Shown: piece after piece, positions 5,867-36,588 of the stretch
Layout: every line of letters starts with the position of its first letter
Position numbering within the stretch: the stretch's first letter is position 1
Assembly (NCBI RefSeq): GCF_032444005.1
Contig: NC_091283.1
Span: 37,014,001-37,078,000 of the forward strand
Direction of reading: 5' to 3'
DNA length: 64,000 nucleotides
Origin: Ranitomeya imitator
Lineage: Eukaryota
The notes under the pieces: model-generated
What the model was told of the DNA's origin: nothing
What the model saw: the letters and a program-made list of their open reading frames with translations, nothing else
Databases searched by the model: none
Program-made: the position numbers and the translations under genes

Positions 5867-5891
5867 CAGACGTCTCTGCTAATGCTTGGAA

Positions 5892-5957
5892 ATGGCCTCA
5901 TATATTGAATTCGCCTTGATGTTATTATGTGGGACATGTACATTAGGGAAGAGACTG
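5892..5957 (+). CDS. CCN-like gene, exon 1 (signal peptide MASYIEFALMLLCGTCTLGKRL)
   Basis: ATG at 5892, 22 codons with a hydrophobic core, phase-0 GT donor at 5958. The 79-nt intron has a TACTAAT branch-like motif (6004-6010) and AG at 6035-6036, and joins exon 2 in frame. Not in the ORF track; read manually. Confidence 0.7.
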
Positions 5958-6036
5958 GTAGGGTTTTTCTCTGTGCCCCATTAAGTCTGCATTACTCTAT
6001 ATGTACTAATGTATATTCTTGTTTCTTGTCCTTAAG

Positions 6037-6241
6037 GGATGTCCTCTAACTTGTGAGTGCTCGGAGGTCCCTACATGTCCCCAAGGAGCAACACCGGTGC
6101 TGGACTCTTGCGGTTGCGGGTGCACAGTTTGTGTCCGAGGCCTTGGCTCTGTATGTGATGGGCTTAGACCGTGTGATGTTGCTAGAAATCTGATGTGCGA
6201 CTATCAGGAGGACCCCAGCTGGCAGCAAGGAGTTTGCAAGG
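6037..6241 (+). CDS. CCN-like gene, exon 2 (IGFBP module, 12 Cys)
   Basis: GCPLTCECSEVPTCPQGATPVLDSCGCGCTVCVRGLGSVCDGLRPCDVARNLMCDYQEDPSWQQGVCK has CCN IGFBP cysteine spacing. Acceptor cttaag; phase-1 donor GTTTGT at 6242 (weak). Confidence 0.9.
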
Positions 6242-7345
6242 GTTTGTCATCTTGTCTTCTATTACCACAGTCAATGAGTTGGTCACCTCAACAATTAGGC
6301 TGGACTATGTTGTCCTGTGCCCATATGTCAGAGAGGAGTGTGGGTCCTAAAGGTGCATTTATGACATATCCATAAATGTTTAAAGGTGAGAATATCCCTT
6401 TAAAGAGATTAAGTCAGCAAAAATGACTGTTTGATATAAAACAAGTGGATGGGAAGGTGCAATGTTGTGTTTGGCCACACCAAGGGTGCACCAAGCGCCT
6501 GTGCTTGGTTTGAACAGTCATTTTGTACTGACAATGTCTTTTAAATACATAAGTCTATTAACTCTATAATGAACACTTTTGCAACTTTTTAATATATATT
6601 GACCCTGATTCATCAATTTTATTTTTTCTAGTGCACTTTTCTAAATGCATCAAAATTCATGTAAAATATTTGATAAATTTGGCACAAATTAAAATATCCC
6701 TTTTCCCCCTTTTGCCATCATTTTGTGCCCTTAATGAAAAGTTGCTTGATCCCTTTAATAAGTTTGAAAAAGTTGCACATCAGTCTTCAAATTGGCAAAT
6801 GAAAAAAAATAGATTTTGTCTCATTGAGGCCAAATTTTCGCAAATGACGAATTAGCCGAGAACATCTGAATAATGACATTTGTAGCCAACCCAAAATATG
6901 GCCAGGACTGAAATAACCAGAGTAAAAATGTTGCAAAAAGCCATCATAAATTCAGTGCTATATTAAAAATGCCTAAAAATGGAACTTTCACAAAAAAAAG
7001 TGTATAAAAAAAAAGTAATAAATTCTTGCGTTTGTGTTCAGCTCTTCCCTGGAAACTGCTTCAGGAAACTCCCTGTTTTGGGGGAAGAATTTTTTTTGCT
7101 AAAGTGGTTTTGAAAAGTTTAGGGAAAAAATGTTTCTTTAGTGTTTTCTTATTTTTTTGCAGCCTCCATAGAATGAAGTGACTGCAAACTTGTAGCTTAA
7201 AGCTGGACATCCCCTTTAAGATTTGACATTGTCTAGTTTGGAGCAGATTCCGTCATGATCCACTTGAAAAAGCTATAAAAAAAAACCTTCTCATATGAAA
7301 AACAAAATGGACCTGACCTATAATTTGTTTTTCACCCCTTTTTAG

Positions 7346-7525
7346 TCCATCATGAGCGACGATCTTGCCTCCACAACGGCAATGAGATTCTCCATGGACG
7401 AGAGTTTGAGCTGGGCTGTGAAAGTTACTGCAAATGTGAGGATGGAAATATCAACTGTGCCCCTCTGTGCCCCCCACTGGAGAAACCCACCAACCCCAAC
7501 TGCAAAGAAATGCGATTAGTGACTG
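7346..7525 (+). CDS. CCN-like gene, exon 3 (VWC module, N-terminal part)
   Basis: After ccctttttag: (V)HHERRSCLHNGNEILHGREFELGCESYCKCEDGNINCAPLCPPLEKPTNPNCKEMRLVT; donor GTAAGA at 7526. Missed by the ORF track. Confidence 0.9.
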
Positions 7526-7860
7526 GTAAGAACATAAGTGGTATATAGACAGGGGTAAATCATTTTTGACTGGTAAGAACATATGTGGCATATAGACAGG
7601 GGTAAACCGTTTTTTTCCAAAAAGTGTGTTGCACCTTTTCAAAGGTTGTGTATGGGATTGCAGGTCAGCCCTACTCACTTTAATGGGGATGAGCTGTAAT
7701 ACGAGACACAACCCATCGGCAGGTTTGGTCCCATTCTTAGAAGAAAGCCACCATGTCTTGTCTGTACAACCTTATGACTGAGGGGTTTGTTTGTGTTCTC
7801 TACATTTCACACTTCGATCATTGTCAAGGACGGTTCATTACATACAGACTGTTCTCGTAG

Positions 7861-8016
7861 TTCCTGGTCAGTGCTGTGCCCAATGGAGATGTCTGGAGGA
7901 GTCAAGTGGGCTTGAAGACTCAAATGAAACCCGTAATGACTACCCAACTCTAGAAGATAAGTCTACAGATGAAGAGGCAAATATCAGGACCAGAAGAGAT
8001 GCCCCTGATTCAGGTG
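7861..8016 (+). CDS. CCN-like gene, exon 4 (end of VWC plus acidic hinge)
   Basis: After ttctcgtag: (V)PGQCCAQWRCLEESSGLEDSNETRNDYPTLEDKSTDEEANIRTRRDAPDSG. Donor GTGAGA at 8017; an alternative in-phase donor GTGGTG at 8014 would shorten the protein by one residue. Confidence 0.88.
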
Positions 8017-9138
8017 GTGAGATGGATCTGAGTGTGGAGCTTTGTATGGGGGGTGGGGAGCAATATATGGGTGGTGGTGGCAGAGATGGTGCATGGACGT
8101 CCGAGTGACTGCCCAAAAGATGGATGACGTAAGGAAAAGGTTCTATGAATTAGTTAGTACATCTATGCTCCCTAAATACCCGTTTTGCCCCGATCTTTTA
8201 AAAAGGAGGTCAGAAAAGTGCCCTTCAAGTATGTACCAGTCCCTCTACGTCTTATGAGTTACTTGATTTCGCCATCTTATTCTATAAATGCAAAAACTTT
8301 TCTATTGCCCAAGACTTTAAAAGTAGATAGACCTGTTTTTCTAGTCTTGGACAAGATTTGAACCCCATTAAAGGTATTTTATTTGTCTTTAATGGATGAA
8401 TTTTTGGCTAAAAATAATATTGGCAATTGGGTTTCATTCAAAATCTTGCCCAGTTTTCCTCCTACGGCCCTTGTGTTGCATTGTCTTTTGCCGGTTGCAG
8501 AATGTGTTACCCGAGAACCTGTCAGTGAGCTCGTTCTGACAGAATCATTTATACCTCTCATCTTCCTTCTCATCACAGCTCATTTCTGACCAAGGGAAAG
8601 TTATGTTGAACCATTTGGTCCTAAATCTGCCGAGAGGAGCTCAGAAGACCAAAGATAAGAGTTATATAAACTCTCCTGTTAGGAGAAGTTAACTGACAGA
8701 TTCTTGGTTAACGCATTCTTCAGCCATCAATAAGCAAAGGATATTGGAGTTAAAAGGTGTAACTTGTTTTTGTTTTTTTTAAAAGAAAATCCAGATATAA
8801 AAATTATTTTTGCATCGAAATAAAAAAAAATTAAGGTGAAACGCTGAAGGTTTCCATCGCCCTTTAGAAGTGTAATATAAAGGGGCCTATCCAAGTAACA
8901 GGTTCCCAGTATGGATTATCTTACTGGTTTCTCTCAATAAGAAATAAGTAAATGAAGTAAGGATCAGGGTATGTGGATGCCTGAGTTAAAGAGCCAAAAA
9001 TCGGTCTCTCCCATTAGCCAGAAGCTTCAAAAGGGCGTAATTACCGCCCCACCCTCCGGATGAAGTCTTTACCGGAAGGATTTCCATACTTGCTTTTGAC
9101 CGACAATGGCGACATCTCATTTCCAATATGTTCCACAG

Positions 9139-9338
9139 ATCCAGAACAGGATGAGGAGCTGCCGGAAGAACCTCAGCCCTGCAAACCCGATACTGAGTGG
9201 ACACCATGCTCCCGCACGTGTGGCTTTGGGAACTCGCTGCGAATAGTCTACGAGAAGGAAACTTGTATCCCTAAAGCTGAGAAGAGGATGTGTATGATCA
9301 GACCCTGCAAGGGCCAATACCCCAACGCCAACTACACG
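9139..9338 (+). CDS. CCN-like gene, exon 5 (TSP1 module, 6 Cys)
   Basis: After ttccacag: (D)PEQDEELPEEPQPCKPDTEWTPCSRTCGFGNSLRIVYEKETCIPKAEKRMCMIRPCKGQYPNANYT, with the WxxCSxTCG motif; phase-0 donor GTAAGA at 9339. Confidence 0.92.
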
Positions 9339-9880
9339 GTAAGAATAGAGAAGGGTCACAAGCAAATTTGGGCAAGTTCCGTGAAGCCACGTGTATACTG
9401 CGGGCTCCGGAGGTTAGCCCTCTCCATAAACTGCAGGTCCTGACAGTGTCATACAGCCGGCACCTGAGTCTCACTGCTGTCGTTATAGCTAGATTCTGTC
9501 TTCAATTGTGACAGTGGCATTTAAGAGATTGGAATTGGGATACGGGGCATCTCTTCCAACTCTTGCACCATCTCCTCCCCTCCCCCCACAACAACATTAT
9601 TGGGAATCTATGGCGTTTTAATGGCTATCAGGAGCCTACTGAATGCTCCGGTGACTGCACACCTATAAAACCTGTGACTGGACCTCATTGAGGAAAGATA
9701 ATTGTACAATGCACTGCAATTATAACAATATATTGTATGTATGGAAAGTTCCCTTTGGGGACCAACAAAAATCTATTTGTTTTTTAAGAAAAGTTCATAT
9801 CACAGCCCACGTTTACTGTAATGTAAATAAAATATATATATAAAAAATTTACCAAAAAACAAATTTTGTATAAATATATA

Positions 9881-10072
9881 GCGCTGGGGTCCTCAGTTCA
9901 AATCCTATCAAGGACAACATCTGCAAGGAGTTTGTATGTTCTCCCCATGTTTGTGTGGGTTTCCTCCCACATTCCAAAGACCTACTGATGGGGAATTTAT
10001 TTAGATTGTGAGCCCCATTGGGGACAGTGATGATAACGTCTGTAAAGCGCTGCGGGATGAGATAGAGCTATA

Positions 10073-10075
<3 letters not shown>
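9881..10075 (+). mobile_element. 5-prime-truncated SINE, same family as 4701-4922
   Basis: B-box remnant (gttcaaatcc), same core and tail (tgtaaagcgctgcgg...gctatata), running into (TA)n. Confidence 0.72.
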
Positions 10076-10149
<74 letters not shown>

Positions 10150-10212
10150 TGTATACATTTAATATTCCAGTAAAAGTGGGTTGTGATATGAATATATATA
10201 TATATATATATA
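10069..10212. repeat. Interrupted (TA)n microsatellite
   Basis: Two TA runs visible directly; the second is the Tc1 target site. Confidence 0.9.
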
Positions 10213-10791
10213 CAGTACAGACCAAAAGTTTGGACACACCTTCTCATTTAAAGATTTTTCTGTATTTTCATGACTATAAAAATTGTACATTCACACTGAA
10301 GGCATCAAAACTATGAATTAACACATGTGGAATTATATACTTAACAAAAAAATGTGAAACAACTGAAATTATGTCTTATATTCTAGGTTCTTCAAAGTAG
10401 CCACCTTTTATTTTGATGACTGCTTTGCACACTCTTGGCATTCTCTTGATGAGCTTCAAGACGTAGTCACCGGGAATAGTTTTCACTTCATAGGTGTGCC
10501 CTGTCACATTTAATAAGTGGGATTTCTTGCCTTATAAATGGGGTTGGGACCATCAGTTGTGTTGAGCAGAAGTCTGGTGGATACACAGCTGATAGTCCTA
10601 TTGAATAGACTGTTAGAATTTGTATTATGGCAAGAAAAAAGCAGCTAAGTAAAGAAAAACAAGTGTCCATCATTACTTTAAGAAATGAAGGTCAGTCAGT
10701 CCAAAAAATTGGGAAAACTTTGAAAGTGTCCCCAAGTGCAGTGGCAAAAACCATCAAGCGCTTCAAAGAAACTGACTCACATGAGGACCGC

Positions 10792-13700
10792 TGTTGTGAA
10801 TTCTGTGGCCAAGCTCCCTCCTGTGGATGAGAGTGGTACTGCGGCTTCTGAGTTTCCTTCCTCAGGTGATGAGGTTAAGTCGTTAGGTGCTGCTCTATTT
10901 AACTCCACCTGGTGCTTTGATCCTGGCCTCCAGTCAATGTTCTAGTATTGGTCTTGCTTCCTCCTGGATCGTTCCTGTGGCCTGTCTATCCTGCATAAGC
11001 TAAGTTTTGCTTGTGTTATTTTTGTTTGCTATTTTTTCTGTCCAGCTTGCTATATTGGTTTTTCTTGTTTGCTGGAAGCTCTGAGACGCAGAGGGAGCAC
11101 CTCCGTACCGTTAGTCGGTGCGGAGGGTCTTTTTGCCCCTCTGCGTGGTTGTTTGTAGGTTTTTGTGTTGACCGCAAAGCTATCTTTCCTATCCTCGGTC
11201 TATTCAGTAAGTCGGGCCTCACTTTGCTTAATCTATTTCATCTCTGTGTTTGTGTTTTCATCTTACTCACAGTCATTATATGTGGGGGGCTGCCTTTTCC
11301 TTTGGGGAATTTCTCTGAGGCAAGGTAGGCTTATTTTTCTATCTTCAGGGCTAGTTAGTTTCTCAGGCTGTGCCGAGTTGCATAGGGAGCGTTAGGCGCA
11401 ATCCACGGCTGCCTCTAGTGTGGTGTGTTAGGATTAGGGATTGCGGTCAGCAGAGTTCCCACGTCTCAGAGCTCGTCCTTTGTTTTTGGTATTTGTCAGG
11501 TCACTTTGTGTGCTCTGAACTTCAATGTCCATTGTGGTTCTGAATTACCTGTTCATAACAGTACTGAAGGCCCAAAGTACTAATGCTTCTCAATAGAGGG
11601 AAAAGAGAAGTTCTGAGACCATTTTTTTTTCTTTGCACTGTATTCTGTCTTTCTTTTCCCCTTTACATCAGGGTGGTTCAGAACACAGGTGTGGACATGG
11701 ACATTCAAGGTCTGTTCTCTTTGATGGATAATCTCGCTATAAATGTACAGAATATTCAAGATTTAGTGGTTCAGAATCCTATGTTAGAACCTAAAATTCC
11801 TATTCCTGAGTTATTTTCTGGAGATAGAGCTAAGTTTTTGAATTTTAAAAATAATTGTAAACTATTTCTGGCTTTGAAACCTCGCTCCTCTGGTGACCCA
11901 GTTCAACAAGTTAAGATCATTATTTCTTTATTACGTGGCGACCCTCAAGACTGGGCATTTTCCCTTGCGCCAGGAGATCCTGCATTATGTAATATTGATG
12001 CGTTTTTTCTGGCGTTCGGATTGCTGTACGACAAAACAAATTCAGTGGATCAGGCAGAGAAAAATTTGCTGGCTCTGTGTCAGGGTCAGGATGAGATAGA
12101 GATTTATTGTCAGAAGTTTAGAAAGTGGTCCGTGCTCACTCAATGGAATGAATGTGCGCTGGCAGCTATTTTCAGAAAGGGTCTCTCTGAAGCCCTTTAG
12201 TATGTCATGGTGGGATTTCCTATGCCTGCTGGTCTTAATGAGTCTATGTCTTTGGCCATTCAGATCGGTCGGCGCTTGCGCGAGCGTAAATCTGTGCACC
12301 ATTTGGCGGTATTATCTGAGCATGAACCTGAGCCTATGCAGTGCGATAGGACTTTGACCAGAGCTGAAAGGCAGGAACACAGACGTCAGAATGGGCTGTG
12401 TTTCTACTGTGGTGATTCCACTCATGCTATCTCCGATTGTCCCAAGCGCACTAAGCGGTTCGCTAGGTCTGCCACCATTGGTACGGTACAGTCGAAATTT
12501 CTTTTGTCCGTTACTTTGATCTGCTCTCTGTCTTCCTATTCTGTCATGGCATTTGTGGATTCAGGCGCTGCCCTGAATTTGATGGACTTAGAGTTTGCTA
12601 GGCGCTGTGGGTTTGTCTTGGAGCCCTTGCAGTGTCCTATTCCATTGAGAGGAATTGATGCTACGCCTTTGGCCAAGAATAAGCCTCAGTATTGGACCCA
12701 GCTGACCATGTGCATGGCTCCTGCGCACCAGGCGGATATTCGCTTTCTGGTGTTGTATAATCTGCATGATGTGGTCGTGTTGGGGTTGCCATGGCTACAA
12801 GTCCATAACCCAGTATTAGATTGGAATTCAATGTCTGTGTCCAGCTGGGGTTGTCAGGGGGTACATGGTGATGTTCCATTTCTGTCTATCTCATCATCCA
12901 CCCCTTCTGAGGTCCCAGAGTTCTTGTCTGATTACCGGGATGTATTCGATGAGCCCAAGTCCAATGCCCTACCTCCGCATAGGGATTGTGATTGTGCTAT
13001 CGATTTGATTCCTGGTAGTAAGTTTCCTAAGGGTCGACTGTTTAATTTATCTGTACCTGAGCACGCCGCTATGCGGAGTTACGTGAAGAAGTCTTTGGAG
13101 AAGGGTCATATTCGCCCGTCATCGTCGCCATTGGGAGCGGGGTTCTTTTTTGTGGCCAAGAAGGATGGTTTGCTGAGACCTTGTATTGATTACCGCCTTC
13201 TAAATAAAATTACGGTCAAATTTCAGTACCCCTTGCCGCTGCTGTCTGATTTGTTTGCTCGGATTAAGGGGGCCAGTTGGTTCACCAAGATAGATCTTCG
13301 TGGTGCGTATAATCTTGTGTGTATTAAACGGGGCGATGAATGGAAAACAGCATTTAATACGCCCGAAGGCCATTTTGAGTACCTGGTTATGCCATTCGGA
13401 CTTTCTAATGCTCCATCAGTGTTTCAGTCCTTTATGCATGACATCTTCCGAGAGTACCTGGATAAATTCCTGATTGTATACTTGGATGATAGTTTGGTCT
13501 TCTCGGATGATTGGGAGTCTCATGTGAAGCAGGTCAGAATGGTGTTCCAGGTCCTGCGTGCTAATTCTTTGTTTGTGAAGGGGTCAAAGTGTCTCTTTGG
13601 TGTTCAGAAGATTTCATTTTTGGGGTTCATTTTTTCTCCTTCTACTATCGAGATGGACCCTGTTAAAGTTCAGGCTATTTATGATTGGACTCAGCCAACA

Positions 13701-16507
13701 TATCTGAAGAGTCTGCAGAAGTTCCTGGGCTTTGCTAATTTTTATCGTCGCTTCATCGCTAATTTTTCTAGCATTGCTAAATCGTTGACTGATTTAACCA
13801 AGAAGGGTGCTGATGTGGTCAATTGGTCTTCTGCTGCTGTGGAAGCTTTTCAGGAGTTGAAGCGTCGTTTTTCTTCTGCCCCTGTGTTGTGCCAACCAGA
13901 TGTTTCGCTTCCGTTCCAGGTCGAGGTTGATGCTTCCGAGATTGGAGCAGGGGCTGTTTTGTCGCAGAGAAGTTCTGATTGCTCGGTGATGAAACCATGC
14001 GCCTTCTTTTCCAGGAAATTTTCGCCTGCTGAGCGAAATTATGATGTTGGCAATCGAGAGTTGCTAGCCATGAAATGGGCATTTGAGGAGTGGCGTCATT
14101 GGCTTGAAGGAGCTAAGCATCGCGTGGTGGTCTTGACTGATCACAAAAACTTGACTTATCTCGAGTCTGCCAAACGGTTGAATCCTAGACAGGCTCGTTG
14201 GTCGCTGTTTTTCTCCCGTTTTGACTTTGTGGTTTCGTACCTTCCGGGCTCTAAAAATGTGAAGGCGGATGCCCTGTCTAGGAGTTTTGTGCCCGATTCT
14301 CCGGGTTTGCCTGAGCCGGCGGGTATTCTCAAAGAGGGGGTAATTTTGTCTGCCATCTCCCCTGATTTGCGGCGGGTGCTGCAAAAATTTCAGGCTAATA
14401 AACCTGACCGTTGCCCAGCGGAGAAACTGTTTGTCCCTGATAGGTGGACGAATAAAGTTATCTCTGAGGTTCATTGTTCGGTGTTGGCTGGTCATCCTGG
14501 AATCTTTGGTACCAGAGATTTGGTGGCTAGATCCTTTTGGTGGCCGTCTCTGTCGCGGGATGCGCGTTCTTTTGTGCAGTCCTGTGGGATTTGTGCTCGG
14601 GCTAAGCCCTGCTGTTCTCGTGCCAGTGGGTTGCTTTTGCCCTTGCCGGTCCCGAAGAGGCCTTGGACACATATCTCTATGGATTTTATTTTGGATCTCC
14701 CCGTCTCTCAAAGAATGTCGGTCATTTGGGTGGTTTGTGATCGCTTCTTTAAGATGGTCCATTTGGTGCCCTTGTCTAAATTGCCTTCCTCCTCTGATTT
14801 GGTGCCGTTGTTTTTCCAGCATGTGGTTCGTTTACATGGCATTCCAGAGAACATCGTTTCTGACAGAGGTTCCCAGTTTGTTTCGAGGTTTTGGCGAGCC
14901 TTTTGTGCTAGGATGGGCATTGATTTGTCTTTTTCCTCGGCTTTCCATCCTCAGACAAATGGCCAGACTGAACGAACCAATCAGACCTTGGAAACATATC
15001 TGAGATGTTTTGTTTCTGCTGATCAGGATGATTGGGTGTCCTTTTTGCCTTTGGCTGAGTTTGCCCTTAATAATCGGGCCAGCTCGGCTACTTTGGTTTC
15101 GCCGTTTTTCTGCAATTCTGGGTTCCACCCTCGTTTCTCTTCAGGGCAGGTTGAGTCTTCAGACTGTCCTGGTGTGGATACTGTGGTGGATAGGTTGCAG
15201 CAGATTTGGACTCATGTAGTGGACAATCTGACTTTGTCCCAGGAGAAGGCTCAACGTTTTGCTAACCGCAGGCGCTGTGTGGGTCCCCGACTTCGTGTTG
15301 GGGATTTGGTTTGGTTGTCATCTCGTTATATTCCTATGAAGGTTTCCTCTCCTAAATTTAAGCCTCGTTTCATTGGTCCATATAGGATTTCTGAGGTTCT
15401 TAATCCTGTGTCTTTTCTTTTGACTCTTCCAGCTTCTTTTTCCATCCATAACGTGTTCCATAGGTCATTGTTGCGGAGATACGTGGCACCTGTGGTTCCA
15501 TCTATTGATCCTCCTGCTCCGGTTTTGGTTGAAGGGGAATTGGAGTATATAGTGGAGAAGATTTTGGATTCTCATGTTTCGAGACGGAAACTCCAGTATC
15601 TGGTTAAGTGGAAAGGTTATGGTCAGGAAGATAATTCCTGGGTCTTTGCCTCTGATGTCCATGCTGCCGATCTGGTTCGTGCCTTTCATGTGGCTCATCC
15701 TGGTCGGCCTGGGGGCTCTGGTGAGGGTTCGGTGACCCCTCCTCAAGGGGGGGGGTACTGTTGTGAATTCTGTGGCCAAGCTCCCTCTTGTGGATGAGAG
15801 TGGTACTGCGGCTTCTGAGTTTCCTTCCTCAGGTGATGAGGTTAAGTCGTTAGGTGCTGCTCTATTTAACTCCACCTGGTGCTTTGATCCTGGCCTCCAG
15901 TCAATGTTCTAGTATTGGTCTTGCTTCCTCCTGGATCGTTCCTGTGGCCTGTCTATCCTGCATAAGCTAAGTTTTGCTTGTGTTATTTTTGTTTGCTATT
16001 TTTTCTGTCCAGCTTGCTATATTGGTTTTTCTTGTTTGCTGGAAGCTCTGAGACGCAGAGGGAGCACCTCCGTACCGTTAGTCGGTGCGGAGGGTCTTTT
16101 TGCCCCTCTGCGTGGTTGTTTGTAGGTTTTTGTGTTGACCGCAAAGCTATCTTTCCTATCCTCGGTCACTTTGCTTAATCTATTTCATCTCTGTGTTTGT
16201 GTTTTCATCTTACTCACAGTCATTATATGTGGGGGGCTGCCTTTTCCTTTGGGGAATTTCTCTGAGGCAAGGTAGGCTTATTTTTCTATCTTCAGGGCTA
16301 GTTAGTTTCTCAGGCTGTGCCGAGTTGCATAGGGAGCGTTAGGCGCAATCCACGGCTGCCTCTAGTGTGGTGTGTTAGGATTAGGGATTGCGGTCAGCAG
16401 AGTTCCCACGTCTCAGAGCTCGTCCTTTGTTTTTGGTATTTGTCAGGTCACTTTGTGTGCTCTGAACTTCAATGTCCATTGTGGTTCTGAATTACCTGTT
16501 CATAACA
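10792..16507 (+). mobile_element. Full-length Ty3/Gypsy chromovirus-type (sushi-like) LTR retrotransposon
   Basis: LTRs 10792-11560 and 15759-16507, both TG...CA; G-rich PPT just before 15759; flanking duplication GACCGC (10786-10791 and 16508-16513). Confidence 0.97.
11692..15797 (+). pseudogene. gag-pol of the Gypsy element, one frame broken by a TAG at 12198-12200
   Basis: ORFs 11583-12200 and 12207-15797 are in the same frame. Contains capsid-like gag, CCHC knuckle (CFYCGDSTHAISDC), protease (FVDSGA), RT (YLDD), RNase H (VDAS...TDHKNL), integrase (SMDF, SDRG, QTER) and a C-terminal chromodomain (YIVEKILD...YLVKWKGY...NSW). Confidence 0.92.
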
Positions 16508-17549
16508 GACCGCACCAGGAAAGGAAGACCAAGAGTCACCTCTGCTTCTGAGGATAAGTTTATCCGAGTCACCAACCTCAGAAATAGAAGCTCAGATTAG
16601 AGACCAGGTCAATGCCACACAGAGTTCTAGCAGCAGACACATCTCTACAACAACTTTTAAGAGGAGACTTTGTGCAGCAGGCCTTCATGGTAAAATAGCT
16701 GCTAGGAAACCACTGCTAAGGACAGGCAACAAGCAGCAGAGACTTGTTTGGGCTAAAGAACACAAGGAATGGACATTAGACCAGTGGAAATCTGTGCTTT
16801 GGTCTGATGAGTCCAAATTTGAGATCTTTGATTCCAACCACCGTGTCTTTGTGCGACGCAGAAAAGGTGAACGGATGGACTCTACATGCCTAGTTCCCAC
16901 CGTGAAGCATGGAGGTGTGATGGTGTGGGGGTGCTTTGCTGGTGACACTGTTGGAGATTTATTCAAAACTGAAGGTATACTGGACCAGCATGGCTACCAC
17001 AGCATCTTGCAGCGGCATGTTATTCCATCTGGTTTGCGTTTAGTTGGACCATCATTTATTTTTCAACAGGACAATGACCCCAAACACACCTCCAGGCTGT
17101 GTAAGGGCTATTTGACCAAGAAGGAGAGTGATGGGGTGCTACGCCAGATGACCTGGCCTCCACAGTCACCAGACCTGAACCCAATCGAGATGGTTTGGGG
17201 TGAGCTGGACCTCAGAGTGAAGGCAAAAGGGCCAACAAGTGCTAAGCATCTCTGGGAACTCCTTCATGATTGTTGGAAGACCATTCCCGGTGACTACCTC
17301 TTGAAGCTCATCAAGAGAATGCCAAGAGTGTACAAAGCAGTCATCAAAGCAAAAGGTGGCTACCTTCAAAGAACCTAGAATATAAGACATAATTTCAGTT
17401 GTTCACACTTTTTTGTTAAGTATATAATTCCACATGTGCTAATTCATAGTTTTGATGCCTTCAGTGTGAATGTACAATTTTCATAGTCATAAAAATACAG
17501 AAAAATCTTCAAATGAGAAGGTGTGTCCAAACATACTGTACAGTATATA

Positions 17550-18910
17550 CAGGTGCTTCTCACAAATTCTCTAATGTTGATGATTATGGCTTACAGTCAG
17601 TGAAAAACCAAAAGTCGTTATCTCCGTAAATTAGAATAATTAACAAAAAACACCTGCAAAGGCTTCCTAAGCATTTATAAAGGTCCTTTAGTCTGTTTCA
17701 GTAGCTCCACAATCATGGGGAAGACTGCTGACTTGACAGATGTCCAGAAGGCGTCACTGACACACTCCTCAAGGAGGGGAAGCCACAAAAGGTCATTGCT
17801 ATAGAAGCCGGCTGTTCACACAGTGCTGTATCTAAGCATATTAATGGAAAGTGGAGTGGAAGGAAAAAGTGTGGCAGAAAAATGTGCACAAGCAACCGGG
17901 ATGACCGCAGCTTTGAAAGGATTGTTAAGAGAAGGCCATTCATAAATGTGGGGGAGATTCACAAGGAGCGGACTGCTGCTGGAGTCATTGCTTCAAGAGC
18001 CACCACACACAGACGTGTCCAGGACATGGGCTACAAGTGTCACATTCCTTGTGTCAGCCACTCATGACCAATAGACAACGCCAGAAGCGTCTTACCTGGG
18101 CCAAGGAGAAAAAGAACTGGACTGTTGTCAGTGGTCCAAGGTGTTGTTTTCAGATGAAAGTAAATTTTGCATTTTATTTGGAAATGAAGGTCCCAGAGTC
18201 TGGAGGAAGAGTGGAGAGACCACAATCCAAGCTGCTGGAGGTCTAGTGTGAAGTCTCCACAATCAGTGATGGTTTGGGAGCCATGTCATCTGCTGGTGTA
18301 GCTCCACTGTGTTTTATCAAGACCAAAGTCAGCACAGCCGTCTACAGGACATTGTAGAGCACTTCATGCTTCCCTCTGCCGACAAGCTTTTTGGAGATGG
18401 AAATTTCATTCTCCAGCAGGACTTGGCACCTGTCCGCACGGCCAAAAGTACCAATACCTGGTTTACAAACAACAGTATCTCTGTGCTTGATTGGCAGCAA
18501 ACTTGCCTGAAGATGAGAGACACAAGACCCAACAATGCTGGTGAGCTGAAGGCTACTATCAAAGCAACTTGGGCTTCCATAACCCCTCAGCAGTGCCAAA
18601 GGCTGATCGCCTCCAGTAATTGATGCAGATGGAGCCCTGACCAAGTATTGAGAGCATTTACTGAACATACATTTCAGATTTTAAAATCATTTTTCAAGCT
18701 GGTGTTATAAAGTATTCTAATTTACTGAGATAATGACTTTTGGGTTTTCATTGGCTGTAAGCCATAATCATCAACATTAACAGAAATAAACACTTGAAAT
18801 AGATCACTCTGTTTGTAATGACTTTATAATATTTGAGTTTCACTTTTTGTATTGAAGAACTGAAATAAATTAACTTTTTGATGATATTCTAATTTAGTGA
18901 GAAGAACGTG
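17550..18910 (+). mobile_element. Second, decayed Tc1-type transposon
   Basis: TA-CAGGTGCTTCTCAC on the left and degenerate inverted end GTGAGAAGAACGTG on the right. Frameshifted transposase from 17714 (MGKTADLTDVQK..., FSDESKF, QQDLAP); the catalytic Glu region is deleted. Confidence 0.85.
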
Positions 18911-19037
18911 TGTGTATACCGCTTGGTGGGCTGCTAGGAGTTGTTCAGTGATATCAGACACAACTCCAATGTGGCCGAGCTTCATGCTGTGGAACGTGCT
19001 GGTTTATATTATTTCCATCCTCTTGTCTTTCGGGCAG

Positions 19038-19358
19038 GTTCTGAAGGCAAACAACGTTTGCAGTCATGTCATGCGCTGGTCCCATCCTTCGCATCTCCGT
19101 TTCCGTGACTGCCTGTCTAGCCGCCCCTTACTCCCCAAATTCTGTGGCCTTTGCTCAGATGGACGTTTCTGTACACCGTTACTGAGTGAGACGCGCCCTG
19201 TGTTATTTCGATGTTCTCACCTCAACCGGAAGGTCACCCGCCAGGTTATGTGGGTGCAGAGGTGTCAGTGCGGGGGTAAGAGAGGAAAGAACAGGAAGAA
19301 GGACAAGGATGCGAGAAAGCCAAGCGAAGAGATGACAAACAGGGTGACAGATGATTAA
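19038..19358 (+). CDS. CCN-like gene, exon 6 (cystine-knot CT module, basic tail, stop)
   Basis: After tcttgtctttcgggcag: VLKANNVCSHVMRWSHPSHLRFRDCLSSRPLLPKFCGLCSDGRFCTPLLSETRPVLFRCSHLNRKVTRQVMWVQRCQCGGKRGKNRKKDKDARKPSEEMTNRVTDD*, with CCN CT motifs (PKFCG.C.DGR.CTP, F.C, V.W...C.C). The six exons total 1128 nt, an open 375-aa frame. Confidence 0.9.
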   Translation, partial: VLKANNVCSHVMRWSHPSHLRFRDCLSSRPLLPKFCGLCSDGRFCTPLLSETRPVLFRCSHLNRKVTRQVMWVQRCQCGGKRGKNRKKDKDARKPSEEMTNRVTDD

Positions 19359-19528: not shown

Positions 19529-19534
19529 AATAAA
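19529..19534 (+). terminator. Candidate polyadenylation signal of the CCN-like gene
   Basis: First AATAAA after the stop at 19358. Confidence 0.5.
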
Positions 19535-26625: not shown

Positions 26626-27002
26626 GTCTTACCTTTCATTTTAATCCTATCTGTGATGATGAGACTGCTGCAAAGTCATCTGTACAGTATAAGGCCTGGT
26701 GGTCAGTGTAAAAATCTCAAGCTTTCAGAATATATACATTTGAAAAACAAAGGCCCAACAACAACAAAATTTAACATTATAAACCGGATTTAAACCATAG
26801 GTCATTTTCTGACAATACAATCTCTTTAATGGTTAACTCCACTTTTCTGGAAGCGACTCTGAAAATAGAAACCCGATTACCCTTCTTTATGCAATGAACG
26901 TCTCCCTTTGCCAAAGCAGAATTGTGCGCTGCGATCAGACATGACCAGAAGCGACGTAACCGGGAGAGACACCGAGGAGTAACGCTGCGCTTAACCCTAC
27001 AG

Positions 27003-27125
27003 GGGACGGACTGCGATGCTACACTTGTCTGTTTCCAACCCTTTCCCCAATGGACTGCATTAAATTCCCAGTGAAATGTCCTCCCAAAGAAAGATGCCTG
27101 TACTCCACCGCCTCCGGCAAAACAA
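27003..27125 (+). CDS. Ly6/uPAR gene, exon 2
   Basis: After ttaaccctacag: DGLRCYTCLFPTLSPMDCIKFPVKCPPKERCLYSTASGKT, with the LxCxxC start and five Cys; donor GTAAGT at 27126. Missed by the ORF track. Confidence 0.92.
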
Positions 27126-27294
27126 GTAAGTGCTGCCAACTGGTGGTCATGGGGGGCATTACAGCTCAGGGTTGTTGTTTTTTTCTGACACAGGTGTTTC
27201 TTTACTGACCCTAACTGGAGAGCGCCCCCTTGTGGTAAGTGTGGGGATTGCAGCATGGAAACTTCTGTACAGTGATGCTCCCTTTCTCCCACAG

Positions 27295-27494
27295 AAAACT
27301 TTCCATTTATCCTGCATGAGATGAGCTGCGCTGTGAACAGTCTGTGTGGGATCAGTGGTGAGAAGAGCACGCTGGGCGTCAACGTGACCTATCACAATGT
27401 TTGCTGCGACACCGACCTCTGCAACTCCGGCCCGGGGTCCAGATCATCCCTAAGCATCGCCCTTATACCGGCACTACTACTGCTCCTGTCATAA
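27295..27494 (+). CDS. Ly6/uPAR gene, exon 3 (CCxxxxCN motif and GPI-anchor signal)
   Basis: After ctttctcccacag: (K)NFPFILHEMSCAVNSLCGISGEKSTLGVNVTYHNVCCDTDLCNSGPGSRSSLSIALIPALLLLLS*. The domain has 10 Cys in total, one N-V-T sequon and a hydrophobic C-terminus. Full protein is 123 aa. Confidence 0.92.
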
Positions 27495-31327: not shown

Positions 31328-31489
31328 CTACTTGAGGGGTCTGGACACCGGGGCGTATGCAAGTTCAATTTCAACTTTGGCCGGGCACGTGCTAACAAAT
31401 TCTTCCCGCTTGTAGGCGTTTGTCAGGTAGCGATGGATTCCACTGAACTCTTCTGGGATCTTAAAGCCTCGATACTTCTCACAGACCAC
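31328..31489 (-). CDS. CLIC1: Chloride intracellular channel 1, last coding exon
   Basis: Minus strand after ctttttctgcag: [53 protein letters not shown], matching the CLIC C-terminus. Confidence 0.92.
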
Positions 31490-31499
31490 CTGCAGAAAA

Positions 31500-32470
31500 A
31501 GAGGGGCGAGACATGAGATTTCAGGAAGCTGAAGGCATAGAAGCAGAGAAGGGGGCGAGAGGCGCCACTTCAGGGAGCCGCAGGCAGAAAGGGGGTGAGA
31601 GGCGCCATATCAGGGTCCAGTAGCAGAAAGGGGGTGAGGCGACATTTCAGGGGTCCGGCAGGGAGGGGGGGCGAGAGGTGCCATTTCAGGAGCCCGGCAG
31701 ACAGGGAGGGGGGTGAGAGGCTCCATTTCAAGGACCCAGCAGACAGGAGGGGGGGGGGGGGGGGCGACAGGTGCCATTTCAGGGCCCAGCAGGCAGAGAA
31801 GGTGCATGAGGTGCCATTTCAGGGGCCCAGTAGGTAGGGAGGGGGCAAGAGGTGCCATTTCAAGGACCCAGCAGACAGGAGGGGGGGGGGGGGGGGCGAC
31901 AGGTGCCATTTCAGGGCCCAGCAGGCAGGGAAGGTGCATGAGGTGCCATTTCAGGGGCCCAGTAGGTAGGGAGGGGGCAAGAGGTGCCATTTCAAAGACC
32001 CAGCAGACAGGGAGGGGGCGTGAGGTGCCATTTCAGGGGCCCGGCAGGCAAGAGGTGCCATTTCAAGGACCCAGAAGGCAGAGAGGGGGCGAGAGGTGCC
32101 ATTTCAGTGGCTCAGCAGGCAAGAAGAGGGCGAGGGGTGCCATTTCAGAGGGCCAGCAGCAGGGAGGGGCGAGAGTTGCCATTTCAGGGGCCCAGCAGGC
32201 AGGGAGGGGGTGTGAGGTGCCATTTCAGGGGCCCGGCAGGGAGGGGGTGTGAGGTGCCATTTCAGGGGCCCGGCAGGGAGGGGGTGTGAGGTGCCATTTC
32301 AGGGGCCCAGCAGGCAGGGAGGGGGGTGAGGTGCCATTTCAGGGGCCCAGCAGGCAGGGAGGGGGGTGAGGTGCCATTTCAGGGGCCCAGCAGGCAGGGA
32401 GGGGGTGTGAGGTGCCATTTCAGAGGTCCAGCATGGAGGGAGGGGGTGAGAGGTGCCATTTCAGGGATTA
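31500..32470. repeat. G-rich minisatellite, about 40-44 bp unit, about 22 copies, in the last CLIC1 intron
   Basis: Unit gaggtgccatttcaggggcccagcaggcagggaggggggt; copies degrade toward the exon. Confidence 0.9.
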
Positions 32471-32786
32471 GAAAGACATATTTCCTATAAACTGGCAGAA
32501 CATGGATGAGGGGGATGGAGCTATTGCTTACAATGAGGGTTGGAGGAGCCCCTTCATATTTTGGTCCATGCTCACAGATGTTTTTTTACCTACCATTTTT
32601 ACCCGCTTTGATCTCGATTCTTCACTGACTGTACTTTAGCTGTGTAGGAGTCTAAGCTAAGAAAGGAACTCAGACACCATCTCTCTATTCTACAGCTCCC
32701 ACTGCCCTCCCCCCATGCTTTATCCTGCAGCTCTGCTCCCCAGGTCCATATCACAGATGATACTGGAAGGCTCTGGCGCCTCTCAC

Positions 32787-32968
32787 CTGGACTATGTGCA
32801 GCTTAGGGAGGAGGTTGCAGTCCGCTAGCGTCAGCTCGTCTCCATCCAGAAACTTGCGGTGAGACACGGTCTCGTCCTCGGCGCTGTTCTCATCTATTTC
32901 TTCCGGGAGGAGAGTGTTTAGGTACGAGTCCAGAATCTGCAGGGCCTTCAGGAGGCCTTTCTCCAGAG
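32787..32968 (-). CDS. CLIC1: CLIC1 coding exon (182 nt)
   Basis: (T)[60 protein letters not shown] with AG/GTGAGA boundaries. [13 protein letters not shown] and HIVQ match CLIC1. Confidence 0.93.
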
Positions 32969-33539
32969 CTGGGGAGTAGAAGGACCGGTTACACCAGGAA
33001 CGTATACAGATACGGAGAGAGCATACAGCACACCTAGCATACTATACAGTCAGTAACTAGAGTCTGGAGAAGTCTCCCTTCTCATTTAAAGCTCAGGTTG
33101 CTGCTCTGTCCACCATGCTTTACTCTGCAGCTCTGACAACTTTTCATCAAGACTGGAGCCTTGTGTCTCTTGTTGCTTCTGCAACAGAGGAAACTCCCCT
33201 GGGGCGAGATATGACCTCATGCACAACACAAACCACGGAAATCATGTGCAGTCAGCAAGTGGCGGCGGAGGGAGGAAGCTGTGGTTGTGACCGATAGTGA
33301 CGGGGCCTCCAGACTTCTGGAGAGCAAGCCAAAAAGTGAAGCTTCCCCCTTCCCAGACTGCTGAGGACTTCTATTGCATCAAGCCATAGAGGGCGAGGTG
33401 GGGCCGTAGGAAAAGAAACCCTCCTGAATATAGAAGGAGACCATCAATCATGGATCTCATATCCACCGCGGCTCCGTAAGAGATCGGGAAACAGCCGGGC
33501 ACCCAGAAGACAAGCGTCGTGAGGAGCGGTAAAGGCCTG

Positions 33540-35172
33540 TTCTGGATCCGAGGGGCCGACGGACGGTGAGTATATAACTATTTTTTATTTTTCAAATTAT
33601 TTTTAACATTAGATAGGCATCATCAATAGTAAAAAGTTGGTCACACAGGGTTAATAGCAGCGTTAACGTACTTCATTGGTCGCGGCCTCTGTTTGTCATG
33701 GAATCCAAGTCACTGATTGGTCTCGCCAGCTGCCTGTCATGGCTGCCGCGACCAATCAGCGACGGGCACAGTCTGGCCGAGAATTAGTCCTTCCCTACTC
33801 CCCACAGTCAGTGCCCGCTCCGTACTCCCCTCCAGTCAGCGCTCACACAGGGTTAATGGCAACGTTAACCGCGGTGTTACGCACTCTGTTAACGCTGCTA
33901 TTAACCCTGTGTGACCAACCAGCATGAATAGTAAAAAGATCTAATGTTAAAAATAATAATAAAAAAAAAATAGTTACATACTCACCTTCCGGAGCCCCCG
34001 GATCGAAGCGGCCGGTTACCGATGCTCCTCGCGACACCCCGGTGACCGCTTCATGCATTGCGGTCTCACGAGGAGATGATGACGTGCGGTCTCGCGAGAC
34101 CGCAATGCACTCTTCAGACCGGAGCGCGCGATGAGCATCAGTAACCGGCCGCCTCGATCCGCTCCGGAAGGTGAGTATGTAACTATTTTTTATTTAAATT
34201 TTTTTTTTTTTTTAACAGGGGTATGGTGCATACTACGTGACTGGGCAATATACTACGTGACTGTGCTGTATACTACGTGGCTGGGCAATATACTACGTGA
34301 CTGTGCTGTATACTACGTGGCTGGGCAATATACTACGTGACTGGGCAATATACTACGTGACTGTGCTGTATACTACGTGGCTGGGCAATATACTACGTGA
34401 CTGGGCAATATACTACGTGGCTGAGCAATATACTACGTGGCTGGGCAATATACTACGTGGCTGGGCAATATACTACGTGGCTGGGCAATATACTACGTGG
34501 CTGGGCAATATACTACGTGGCTGGGCAATATACTACGTGGCTGTGCTGTATACTACGTGGCTGGGCAATATACTACGTGGCTGGGCAATATACTATGTGG
34601 GCTGTGCAATATACTACGTGGCTGGGCAATATACTACGTGACTGTGCTGTATACTACGTGGCTGGGCAATATACTACGTGACTGTGCTGTATACTACGTG
34701 GCTGGGCAATATACTACGTGACTGGGCAATATACTACGTGACTGTGCTGTATACTACGTGGCTGGGCAATATACTACGTGACTGGGCAATATACTACGTG
34801 GCTGAGCAATATACTACGTGGCTGGGCAATATACTACGTGGCTGGGCAATATACTACGTGGCTGGGCAATATACTACGTGGCTGGGCAATATACTACGTG
34901 GCTGGGCAATATACTACGTGGCTGGGCAATATACTACGTGGCTGGGCAATATACTACGTGGCTGGGCAATATACTACGTGGCTGGGCAATATACTACGTG
35001 GCTGGGCAATATACTACGTGGCTGTGCTGTATACTACGTGGCTGGGCAATATACTACGTGGCTGGGCAATATACTATGTGGGCTGTGCAATATACTACGT
35101 GGCTGGGCAATATACTACGTGGACATGCATATTCTAGAATACCCGATGTATTAGAATCGGGCCACCATCTAG
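33540..35172 (+). mobile_element. Non-autonomous Helitron-like element carrying an expanded 20-bp array
   Basis: The 3-prime end has a CCCGAT...ATCGGG hairpin (35142-35161) followed by CTAG|T (35169-35173). Internal palindrome of about 220 bp at 33968-34190. Left boundary approximate. Confidence 0.65.
34231..35122. repeat. 20-bp minisatellite TACTACGTGGCTGGGCAATA, about 44 copies
   Basis: Visible directly. Variant markers (CTGAGCAATA near 34421 and 34802; TACTATGTGGGCTGTGC near 34592 and 35073) show a higher-order duplication. Confidence 0.95.
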
Positions 35173-35175
35173 TAC

Positions 35176-35992: not shown

Positions 35993-36481
35993 TGTAAAAT
36001 TTATATATCTATAGATAGAAAGATAGAGATATATATATTTTAATATGGTAAGTAACAAAATAAACCTGCATAATGAAATTTCTCACCAGTCATTTTTGTT
36101 TTCGGTTTCTTTTTCTCACTTGAGTAAAGATTCAGTATATACGGTACCCATGTAAAAGTATATGGTAGTTTTACTTATTTTTCAAGCAATTAAAAAAAAT
36201 TATCCTACATTACGGTATACAAAGATAGATAATAGATAGAGAGACATATACCGTATATCTATATATACCGTATATCTATCCCTCTATAAAAAGGTTAATG
36301 AGACTACTTCCGGACTACATTAAGCCTGAATTTCACGTTAGTGTGGTTTATTCCCACGATTGGATAAGGTCTGCAGACTGGATCCCTGCACTTAAATATG
36401 CTGCTCTGGTTTGTGCTCCCGAGTTTCAGGCTTTTGGGTGCGGATTACCATTTCTCGGGTCTTCGGGCGATTTGCACTTAC

Positions 36482-36588
36482 TTTGGTTCTGAGACGGGTT
36501 GGGATTCTTGATGTAGGCGGAGAATTTGGCAAAGACATCAAGTCCAGCGGTGTTTGATTCTGGGTTTTTGGCAGCCAACTTTGGGTAT
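36482..36588 (-). CDS. CLIC1: CLIC1 coding exon (107 nt)
   Basis: [35 protein letters not shown] with AG/GTAAGT boundaries; phases fit both neighbours. Confidence 0.93.

What the first reader, a model, noticed from the sequence alone, without database searches (positions are those of the whole stretch)
5892..19358. A divergent, apparently intact CCN-family gene that matches none of CCN1-6 cleanly
Seen: six exons with compatible phases give an open 375-aa protein with signal peptide and all four CCN modules, while the ORF track shows only pieces. Known: CCN5 lacks the CT module and CCN6 lacks four VWC cysteines; this protein has a CT module and all 10 VWC cysteines. Non-cysteine residues diverge strongly from the well-conserved CCN1-4 sequences. 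Inference: a fast-evolving extra CCN paralogue absent from mammals. Retention of an open frame and of most cysteines despite the divergence argues for purifying selection. It may already be automatically annotated as CCN-like; I cannot check that.
Basis: partly seen in the sequence, partly recalled or inferred. Interest (0 to 1): 0.85.

Follow-up and report, generated by a model that had tools for sequence, protein, structure and literature searches.

The report
Extra CCN gene kept by amphibians
This is a real, transcribed frog gene for a secreted four-module CCN (CYR61/CTGF/NOV-type) protein that belongs to an old, fast-evolving extra branch of the family, kept by coelacanth, lungfish and amphibians but not found in amniotes, and apparently never described as a group of its own.

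Summary
It has IGFBP (12 Cys), VWC (10 Cys), TSP1_CCN and a C-terminal knot with 8 of the usual 10 Cys. RNA contigs from four runs carry four junctions exactly, and loose ends show the fifth.

Orthologues occur in frogs, a salamander, a caecilian, lungfish and coelacanth, with a sawshark protein at the base. This clade has 99/99 support and lies outside CCN1, ccn1l1, CCN2, CCN3, CCN4 and CCN5. AU tests reject union with CCN3 and CCN2, but not with CCN1 (p 0.08). No CCN6 sequence could be obtained for the tree.

Synteny (CCN, then Ly6, then CLIC1) is shared by three other frogs and matches no CCN1-6 locus I know of.

Modules are under purifying selection (dN/dS 0.07-0.24). Signal peptide, hinge and tail drift near neutrality.

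Clade traits are CGCGC in place of CGCC, loss of two knot cysteines, a VWC split by an extra intron, and VWC number from 0 to 6 between species.

Databases already carry relatives, named inconsistently as 'CCN1/2/3/5-like'. It is a new member of a known family and of moderate interest. Other first-reader notes on this same window had already flagged the hinge site, the knot cysteines and the Ly6-CLIC1 linkage; the scan's index showed nothing on other DNA.

The parts
5892..5957 (+). Exon 1: start codon and signal-peptide-like N-terminus (22 codons)
   Evidence: model. RNA contigs start at 5873-5882 and join 5956>6036.
6037..6241 (+). Exon 2: IGFBP module, 12 Cys, with CGCGC where canonical CCNs have CGCC
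   Evidence: Pfam IGFBP E 1.4e-5. Motif comparison. Joint 6240>7345.
7346..7525 (+). Exon 3: first part of VWC (7 of its 10 Cys); phase 1-1, 180 nt
   Evidence: Pfam VWC 4.6e-5. The same 180-nt exon is present in Mixophyes and Spea. Joint 7524>7860.
7861..8013 (+). Exon 4: end of VWC (last 3 Cys) plus the acidic hinge with R-T-R-R
   Evidence: dN/dS of the hinge is about 1.
9139..9338 (+). Exon 5: rest of the hinge and the TSP1_CCN module (6 Cys)
   Evidence: Pfam TSP1_CCN 1.4e-16. Joint 8010>9136 and loose end at 9340 reading into exon 6.
9339..19037 (+). Intron 5 (9.7 kb), swollen by nested transposons (Ty3/gypsy element 10791-16508 inside a Tc1/mariner copy)
   Evidence: ORFs. LTR pair 10791-11561 and 15758-16508. 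It is spliced out in RNA.
19038..19358 (+). Exon 6: CT cystine-knot module with 8 Cys, then a lysine/arginine-rich and acidic tail, then the stop codon
   Evidence: phmmer hits to CCN CT domains. AF2 model has block-mean pLDDT 87-97 over residues 11-80. Foldseek finds VWF CTCK, sclerostin and Norrin. RNA runs hold 0.8 of the sampled words.
26981..27455 (+). Downstream neighbour: two exons of a Ly6/uPAR three-finger gene
   Evidence: tblastn with the Spea, Pyxicephalus and Mixophyes neighbours. The Spea neighbour is called UPAR_LY6, and the Pyxicephalus one weakly so.
31331..46672 (-). Next neighbour: CLIC1-type chloride intracellular channel gene (five exons found)
   Evidence: tblastn. The best PDB matches of two exons are CLIC1: 97 bits against 88.6 for CLIC6 and 87.8 for CLIC4, and 77.5 bits against 62.8 for CLIC4.

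Best explanation
A functional gene for a secreted matricellular protein of the CCN family. It is the frog representative of a separate, old paralogue group, called here clade X. The group is present in coelacanth, lungfish, caecilians, salamanders and frogs, and has probably been lost in amniotes. It lies next to a Ly6 gene and CLIC1. In humans those two genes sit in the MHC class III region, so clade X is most simply a genome-duplication sister of the CCN1-type genes. This last step is inferred, not shown. The protein keeps the four CCN modules under purifying selection, while the signal peptide, hinge and tail drift. It therefore most likely acts as other CCNs do: outside the cell, binding matrix, integrins or heparan sulphate and growth-factor or Wnt-BMP pathway partners through separate modules. 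This is inferred from family knowledge. Three departures are shown. First, the CT knot has lost the two cysteines that align with Norrin's Cys95 and Cys131, which are interchain-disulphide cysteines in Norrin. Covalent pairing through those positions is therefore impossible, and the fold is otherwise kept. Second, an extra glycine splits the CC pair of the IGFBP motif. Third, the VWC is coded by two symmetric phase-1 exons, and this unit has been multiplied (up to 6 copies) or deleted (0 copies) in other frogs.
For: - Gene model and RNA junctions.
- Module calls.
- Orthologues and their conflicting names.
- ML tree with clade X at 99/99 and an internal order that follows the species tree.
- AU tests: X with CCN3 p 1.8e-4, X with CCN2 p 5e-17, X with CCN1 p 0.079.
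- Lungfish has both CCN1 (P0237) and an X member (P0151); Spea, Rhinophrynus and Pelobates fuscus have CCN3 as well as X.
- Synteny CCN, Ly6, CLIC in Spea and Pyxicephalus, and CCN with a nearby CLIC in Mixophyes; all three are present in the window. The CLIC is CLIC1-like.
- dN/dS is 0.15-0.27 overall. By module: IGFBP 0.15-0.22, VWC 0.17-0.18, TSP1 0.07-0.15, CT 0.14-0.24. Signal peptide and hinge are near 1 (0.67-1.12) and the tail is 0.37-1.26.
- The clade signatures are present in every sarcopterygian member checked.
- CT profile alignment to Norrin and VWF, with the interchain cysteines taken from PMC4497409.
- CT fold.
- Exon structures.
- VWC counts of 0, 1, 2 and 6.
Against: - No CCN6 sequence could be obtained, so the tree does not exclude CCN6 directly. 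The evidence here is indirect: all 10 VWC Cys are present, and CT identity to CCN6 is 27-31%, among the lowest.
- Absence from amniotes and ray-finned fishes rests on word-indexed protein searches of annotated proteins, not on genome searches.
- The sawshark member is a long branch with canonical cysteine patterns, so a pre-sarcopterygian origin is uncertain.
- dS is saturated for most pairs.
- The ohnologue-of-CCN1 idea rests on my own knowledge of human gene order and on a non-significant AU test.
- No functional or tissue data are available.
- The furin-type hinge site is not conserved across orthologues.
Confidence: 0.8

Rival explanations
1. It is simply the fast-evolving orthologue of CCN1 (CYR61), as NCBI names the coelacanth member, and not an extra gene.
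For: The coelacanth member is named 'CCN family member 1'. The AU test does not reject X joined with CCN1 (p 0.079).
Against: Lungfish has a CCN1 inside the CCN1 clade (P0237) as well as an X member (P0151). Xenopus tropicalis has a canonical CCN1 (table in PMC6610741). The neighbours here are Ly6 and CLIC1, not those of CCN1 as I know them. X lies outside the CCN1 clade in the tree.
Confidence: 0.06
2. It is a young, lineage-specific duplicate of CCN3, CCN2 or CCN5 in frogs, as the '-like' names suggest.
For: Automatic names are 'CCN3-like', 'CCN5-like', 'CCN2-like' and 'NOV homolog'. The Xenopus laevis CCN3 CT gives the highest single identity to the CT model, 41%.
Against: AU tests reject X with CCN3 and X with CCN2. 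CCN2, CCN3, CCN4 and CCN5 form a starred clade that excludes X. Members occur in coelacanth and lungfish, and the clade follows the species tree.
Confidence: 0.04
3. It is a transcribed but decaying relic with no protein function.
For: It diverges quickly. It has lost two knot cysteines. The VWC has been lost in ranoid frogs. A 9.7-kb transposon-filled intron is present. One read-through chimera with the next gene was seen.
Against: The frame is open in every species examined. All splice sites are intact. dN/dS is 0.07-0.24 in each module and higher outside them, 0.37-1.26. The 36 cysteines of the four modules are all present, against 38 in a canonical CCN. Both partners of one disulphide position were lost together across the whole clade, which argues against random loss.
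Confidence: 0.05

Closest known systems
CCN1 (CYR61) and the fish/coelacanth ccn1l1 genes
   Same: Same four-module plan: IGFBP, VWC, TSP1_CCN and CT, with 12, 10 and 6 cysteines in the first three. X groups in the CCN1-like part of the tree rather than with CCN2-5, and union with CCN1 is not rejected.
   Different: It is a separate clade, and lungfish and coelacanth each have both kinds. It has CGCGC in place of CGCC. The CT has 8 rather than 10 Cys and ends in a basic then acidic tail rather than the conserved CCN1 C-terminus. It has 6 exons rather than 5. Its neighbours are Ly6 and CLIC1. It evolves faster.
CCN3 (NOV)
   Same: This is the most frequent automatic name for relatives. The CT is 41% identical to Xenopus laevis CCN3 over the modelled knot.
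   Different: Union is rejected by the AU test, p 1.8e-4. The same frogs have a true CCN3 that is 80% identical between species, where X is 54%.
CCN5 (WISP2) and CCN6 (WISP3)
   Same: They are CCN family members that also depart from the full cysteine plan. By established family knowledge, CCN5 lacks the CT and CCN6 lacks four VWC cysteines.
   Different: This protein has a CT and all ten VWC cysteines. CCN5-type sequences fall in another starred clade. CCN6 CT identity is only 27-31%. CCN6 was not in the tree.
CTCK/DAN cystine knots (Norrin, VWF C-terminal knot, sclerostin)
   Same: The CT model matches these folds with probability about 1, and the profile aligns the knot cysteines.
   Different: The cysteines aligned with Norrin Cys95 and Cys131, which are interchain bridges in Norrin (PMC4497409), are absent from every sarcopterygian X member checked.

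Membership tests
CCN family | N-terminal secretory signal | tested here: inconclusive
   A hydrophobic N-terminus of about 22 residues lies on its own exon and is matched in orthologues. No signal-peptide predictor was available.
CCN family | IGFBP-like module with 12 cysteines | tested here: met
   Pfam IGFBP E 1.4e-5 (26.1 bits, just under the 28-bit cut-off) with 12 Cys. The GCGCC motif carries an inserted G.
CCN family | VWC module with 10 cysteines | tested here: met
   Pfam VWC 4.6e-5 on exon 3. Ten Cys lie across exons 3 and 4. dN/dS is 0.17-0.18.
CCN family | CCN-type TSP1 module | tested here: met
   PF19035 TSP1_CCN at 60.9 bits against a cut-off of 27.
CCN family | C-terminal cystine knot with 10 cysteines | tested here: not met
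   The fold is kept but only 8 Cys are present. The first C of the CC pair and the last C are missing.
CCN family | Five-exon gene with one exon per module (VWC exon 252 bp, TSP1 exon 212 bp according to PMC6610741) | tested here: not met
   There are six exons. The VWC is split 180 + 153 nt and the TSP1 exon is 200 nt. The same split is seen in Mixophyes and Spea.
CCN1 orthologue group | Falls inside the CCN1 clade and shares its neighbours | tested here: not met
   It lies outside the CCN1 clade. Lungfish has both kinds. The neighbours are Ly6 and CLIC1. Sisterhood with CCN1 is not rejected.
CCN2 / CCN3 orthologue groups | Falls with CCN2 or CCN3 | tested here: not met
   AU p 5e-17 for CCN2 and 1.8e-4 for CCN3.
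CCN5 orthologue group | No CT module | tested here: not met
   A CT module is present. The CCN5-type clade is separate.
CCN6 orthologue group | VWC lacking four cysteines; falls with CCN6 | tested here: inconclusive
   All ten VWC Cys are present, so that feature is not met. CT identity to CCN6 is 27-31%. No CCN6 sequence could be fetched for the tree.

The most novel reading that the evidence does not exclude
Clade X is a fourth genome-duplication sister of the CCN1-type genes. It sits on the MHC paralogous region (Ly6-CLIC1), as CCN1 sits beside DDAH1, and survives only in lobe-finned fishes and amphibians. Having lost the two cysteines that align with interchain-bridge positions of CTCK knots, and being free to vary its VWC number from 0 to 6, it would work as a monomeric, tunable extracellular trap or antagonist of BMP/Wnt-type ligands, rather than as a classic CCN.
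Probability: 0.2. Interest if true: 0.6.

Novelty: new member of a known kind. Interest (0 to 1): 0.45.

Why it matters
Reviews and the one comparative study I could read (PMC6610741) treat land vertebrates as having exactly six CCN genes, each with a fixed five-exon plan. This gene shows that amphibians, lungfish and coelacanth keep at least one more lineage, with a different exon plan, a reduced knot and a VWC module whose copy number swings between species. That gives a natural experiment on what each CCN module and the two extra knot cysteines are for. It also warns that the 'CCN1/2/3/5-like' labels in amphibian annotations hide a single orthology group. The tree suggests in addition that some reptiles keep other extra CCN branches.

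Tried and rejected
- Pfam scans of 20 large ORFs elsewhere in the window gave nothing useful for synteny: only a Tc3-type transposase domain and low-complexity hits.
- Single-sequence search of the CT exon against PDB sequences found nothing. A profile was needed.
- The coelacanth member could not be located on a contig. The Staurois and Rhinophrynus loci had no DNA served. Synteny outside frogs is therefore untested.
- Literature searches for 'CCN7', for ccn1l1/cyr61l names, for CCN with ohnolog, DDAH1 or paralogon, and for MHC class III with Xenopus, CLIC1 and CYR61 found no description of this group.
- The furin-site idea was checked. R-x-[KR]-R in the hinge is present here, in Rhinophrynus and in the salamanders. 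It is absent from Mixophyes, Spea, lungfish and coelacanth, so I do not treat it as a family trait.
- My first exon mapper produced false micro-exons for Pyxicephalus. I redid it with the fewest-exon solution.
- The full spliced protein was never sent to the search tools, because no reference exists for it and long sequences may not be typed. Exon references and orthologue ids were used instead.
Full report
**What is there**

Reading 5700-9500 and 18700-19700 and assembling the exons in a script gives six exons on the + strand:
- 5892-5957
- 6037-6241
- 7346-7525
- 7861-8013
- 9139-9338
- 19038-19358

All are bounded by GT..AG, with incoming phases 0,0,1,1,1,0. Of its 38 cysteines, two lie in the N-terminal hydrophobic stretch.

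Pfam scans of the separate exon translations gave:
- IGFBP: E 1.4e-5
- VWC: E 4.6e-5
- TSP1_CCN: E 1.4e-16
- C-terminal exon: only weak cystine-knot and DAN hits

Counting cysteines gives IGFBP 12, VWC 10, TSP1 6 and CT 8.

**Transcription**

RNA-type runs hold up to 0.8 of the sampled words of exon 6 plus the 3' UTR. I laid four runs on 5700-9500. Contigs join 5956>6036, 6240>7345, 7524>7860 and 8010>9136, which are the modelled junctions allowing for equivalent cut positions. The loose end at 9340 reads the first 30 bases after the exon 6 acceptor.

All five junctions are therefore seen. Depth falls to zero in most of the intronic bins; the exceptions are short repeat-like pieces.

Three minor points came out of the same call:
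- One contig in run X1 instead joins the exon 5 donor to window 27004. That is an exon of the next gene, so this is a read-through chimera.
- An A>G difference at 9203 appears in three runs. It is the third base of a Thr codon, so it is synonymous.
- The runs carry no tissue labels.

**Relatives**

An exhaustive phmmer search of the CT exon gave three strong hits and one weaker one, with about 105 further hits, mostly to CT domains of ordinary CCNs, at E 7e-11 to 8e-4. Word-indexed searches with one of those hits and with a profile of eight members recovered the same group, which I call clade X:
- Many frogs: Mixophyes, Pseudophryne, Spea, Pelobates, Pelodytes, Leptobrachium, Rhinophrynus, Hymenochirus, Pyxicephalus, Staurois, Mantella, Hyperolius, Nanorana
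- The salamander Pleurodeles
- The lungfish Protopterus
- The coelacanth Latimeria
- The caecilian Geotrypetes

Source names conflict: 'CCN family member 3-like', '5-like', '2-like', '1-like', 'CYR61-like', 'protein NOV homolog', 'kielin/chordin-like', and 'CCN family member 1' for Latimeria. No amniote or ray-finned fish protein fell in the group.

The window's protein is 59% identical to the best full-length relative, Mixophyes, and 31-34% identical to canonical CCNs. The window therefore comes from a neobatrachian frog that is not among the species recovered.

**Phylogeny**

I collected named CCN1, ccn1l1, CCN2, ccn2b, CCN3, CCN4 and CCN5 sequences, plus a spider and a tunicate CCN as outgroups. 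A careful IQ-TREE run used 70 rows, 343 columns and the LG+C20 PMSF model.

- Clade X has 99/99 support.
- Its internal order is sawshark, then coelacanth plus lungfish, then caecilian plus salamander, then frogs. This follows the species tree.
- CCN2, ccn2b, CCN3, CCN4 and CCN5 form a starred clade (96/95) that excludes X.
- X, ccn1l1 and CCN1 (with a second CCN1-like clade) arise from an unresolved base.

AU tests:

| Constraint | p-AU | Result |
|---|---|---|
| X with CCN3 | 1.8e-4 | rejected |
| X with CCN2 | 5e-17 | rejected |
| X with CCN1 | 0.079 | not rejected |

Lungfish has a CCN1 inside the CCN1 clade as well as an X member. Coelacanth has ccn1l1, CCN3 and an X member. Spea, Rhinophrynus and Pelobates fuscus have CCN3 besides X. 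X is therefore an additional gene, not a renamed one.

Two limits apply.
- I could not obtain any CCN6 sequence. CCN6 is argued against only indirectly: all ten VWC cysteines are present, and the CT model is 27-31% identical to reviewed CCN6, among the lowest values for the family.
- The sawshark row is a long branch.

**Clade signatures**

Every coelacanth, lungfish and amphibian member checked shows two traits, in the modules that were read for it.
- It has C-G-C-G-C where all other CCNs, including the outgroups and the sawshark protein, have C-G-C-C.
- It has D-G-R-x-C in place of D-G-R-C-C, and it lacks the last knot cysteine.

A profile of CT domains aligned to PDB sequences puts the lost first C of the pair opposite Norrin Cys95 and VWF Cys2773. 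It puts the lost last C opposite Norrin Cys131. In Norrin, Cys93-Cys95' (twice) and Cys131-Cys131' are the interchain bridges (PMC4497409).

An AlphaFold model of the window's CT, built with a 66-row alignment, is confident over residues 11-80 (block means 87-97) and disordered in the tail. Foldseek matches it to the VWF CTCK, sclerostin, PRDC and Norrin, and to the CT of reviewed CCN1, CCN2, CCN3, CCN4 and CCN6.

So the knot fold is kept while two non-core cysteines were lost together. Whether canonical CCNs use that pair within or between chains I did not test.

**Gene structure**

Exact mapping of orthologue proteins onto their loci gives these exon sizes in nt:

| Species | Exon sizes |
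|---|---|
| Window | 66/205/180/153/200/321 |
| Mixophyes | 66/205/180/114/200/318 |
| Spea | 87/208/180/153/194/339 |
| Mantella | 66/199/200/342 |
| Pyxicephalus | 66/199/200/342 |

The intron that splits the VWC after 180 nt is therefore old. It is shared by pelobatoid and neobatrachian frogs and is not a recent insertion. The ranoid genes lack both VWC exons.

PMC6610741 reports five exons, with a 252-bp VWC exon and a 212-bp TSP1 exon, in all vertebrate CCNs it examined.

Both VWC exons are phase 1-1, so the pair can be duplicated or dropped in frame. Pfam counts fit this:
- 6 VWC stretches in Pelobates fuscus and in Pelodytes
- 2 in Pleurodeles, Geotrypetes and one Pelobates cultripes model
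- 1 in Mixophyes, lungfish and coelacanth, and likewise in the window's own gene
- 0 in Pyxicephalus

These are automatic gene models and need RNA confirmation.

**Selection**

Nei-Gojobori estimates on codon alignments give dN/dS of 0.15-0.27 for all ten pairs. dS is saturated for most. The best pair, Pyxicephalus and Mantella, has dS 0.53 and dN/dS 0.26.

By region:

| Region | dN/dS |
|---|---|
| IGFBP | 0.15-0.22 |
| VWC | 0.17-0.18 |
| TSP1 | 0.07-0.15 |
| CT knot | 0.14-0.24 |
| Signal peptide and hinge | 0.67-1.12 |
| Tail | 0.37-1.26 |

The gene is fast. X is 53.6% identical between Spea and Rhinophrynus, where CCN3 is 80.0%. Against coelacanth the figures are 37.5% for X and 65.3% for CCN3.

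This is the pattern of a working modular protein with free linkers, not of a relic.

**Neighbourhood**

- In Spea and Pyxicephalus the gene is followed by a Ly6/uPAR gene on the same strand and then a CLIC gene on the opposite strand. In Mixophyes the CLIC is seen about 10 kb downstream.
- tblastn of those loci against the window finds the Ly6 exons at 26981-27130 and 27282-27455.
- It finds CLIC exons on the minus strand at 31331-31501, 32769-32972, 36477-36629, 38187-38330 and 46562-46672.
- Two CLIC exons match CLIC1 best among solved CLIC1-6.

From my own knowledge of human gene order, LY6G6 genes, DDAH2 and CLIC1 are neighbours in the MHC class III region, and CCN1 lies beside DDAH1 on 1p22. 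That would make X the MHC-paralogon counterpart of CCN1. This is an inference. I found no DDAH in the window, and the AU test is only permissive. A first-stage note on this window (s1-288201) proposes the same reading, so it is not independent support.

**How it probably works**

Shown here:
- It is secreted-type, with four constrained modules.
- The knot fold is kept without the two extra cysteines.
- The tail is basic, disordered and freely evolving.
- This species has a furin-type R-T-R-R in a neutrally evolving acidic hinge.

Inferred from what CCN proteins are known to do:
- It acts extracellularly as a matricellular adaptor or modulator, with modules binding different partners.
- The tail and CT probably bind heparan sulphate.
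- Hinge cleavage in this species could release N- and C-terminal halves.
- The hinge motif is not conserved across the clade, so I do not make it part of the family's mechanism.

**Novelty**

Relatives are in public databases as automatic models, so the sequence class is not new. I found no paper that recognises the group. The comparative study I read lists six CCNs for Xenopus and states that land vertebrates consistently have six. It does mention in passing an amphibian 'CCN2-like' without VWC, which may be a member.

I rate it a new member of a known family, with some unusual traits, and of moderate interest.

Noticed in passing
window 10791-16508 (LTRs 10791-11561 and 15758-16508; ORFs 11583-12200 and 12207-15797): A Ty3/gypsy-type LTR retroelement with an uninterrupted 1196-aa pol-like ORF. 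Its LTRs differ by one mismatch and one 20-nt gap over 771 nt, so it looks young. It is inserted into a Tc1/mariner copy whose transposase pieces lie at about 10627-10790 and 16472-17378, all inside intron 5 of the CCN gene.
   Followed up: partly
window 9338 joined to 27004: One RNA contig of run X1 splices the exon 5 donor of the CCN gene to an exon of the downstream Ly6/uPAR gene instead of exon 6. This is a read-through chimera seen in one run only.
   Followed up: partly
window 9203: A>G in three RNA runs but not in a fourth. It is the third base of a Thr codon (ACA to ACG), so it is synonymous and most simply a polymorphism between individuals.
   Followed up: partly
window 6468-6534 (intron 2): A stretch of about 40-60 nt reaches very high summed contig depth in the RNA-type runs (270-1072, against 11-51 on the exons). 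Unrelated sequence lies on both sides of the matching contigs. It is a short repeat shared with many other transcripts, not part of this mRNA.
   Followed up: no
window 47400-48100: A tandem array of a short unit gives long repetitive ORFs on both strands (Arg/Ala/Glu/Gly-rich on +). It lies just upstream of the CLIC1-type gene's mapped exons, and its G+C is about 0.53.
   Followed up: no
window 10000-10240: A long TA-rich microsatellite, read as YIYIYI in several frames.
   Followed up: no
proteins P0080 (Chelonoidis) and P0280 (Podarcis), tree: A turtle protein groups with teleost ccn2b and the lungfish and shark 'CCN2-like' proteins. A lizard protein groups with a second CCN1-like clade of ray-finned fishes. 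Some reptiles may therefore also keep CCN branches that mammals lack.
   Followed up: no
proteins P0129, P0003, P0150 (Pelobates fuscus, Pelodytes ibericus): Orthologues of this gene are predicted with six tandem VWC modules and are auto-named 'kielin/chordin-like'. The repeat unit equals the two VWC exons (about 111 aa).
   Followed up: partly
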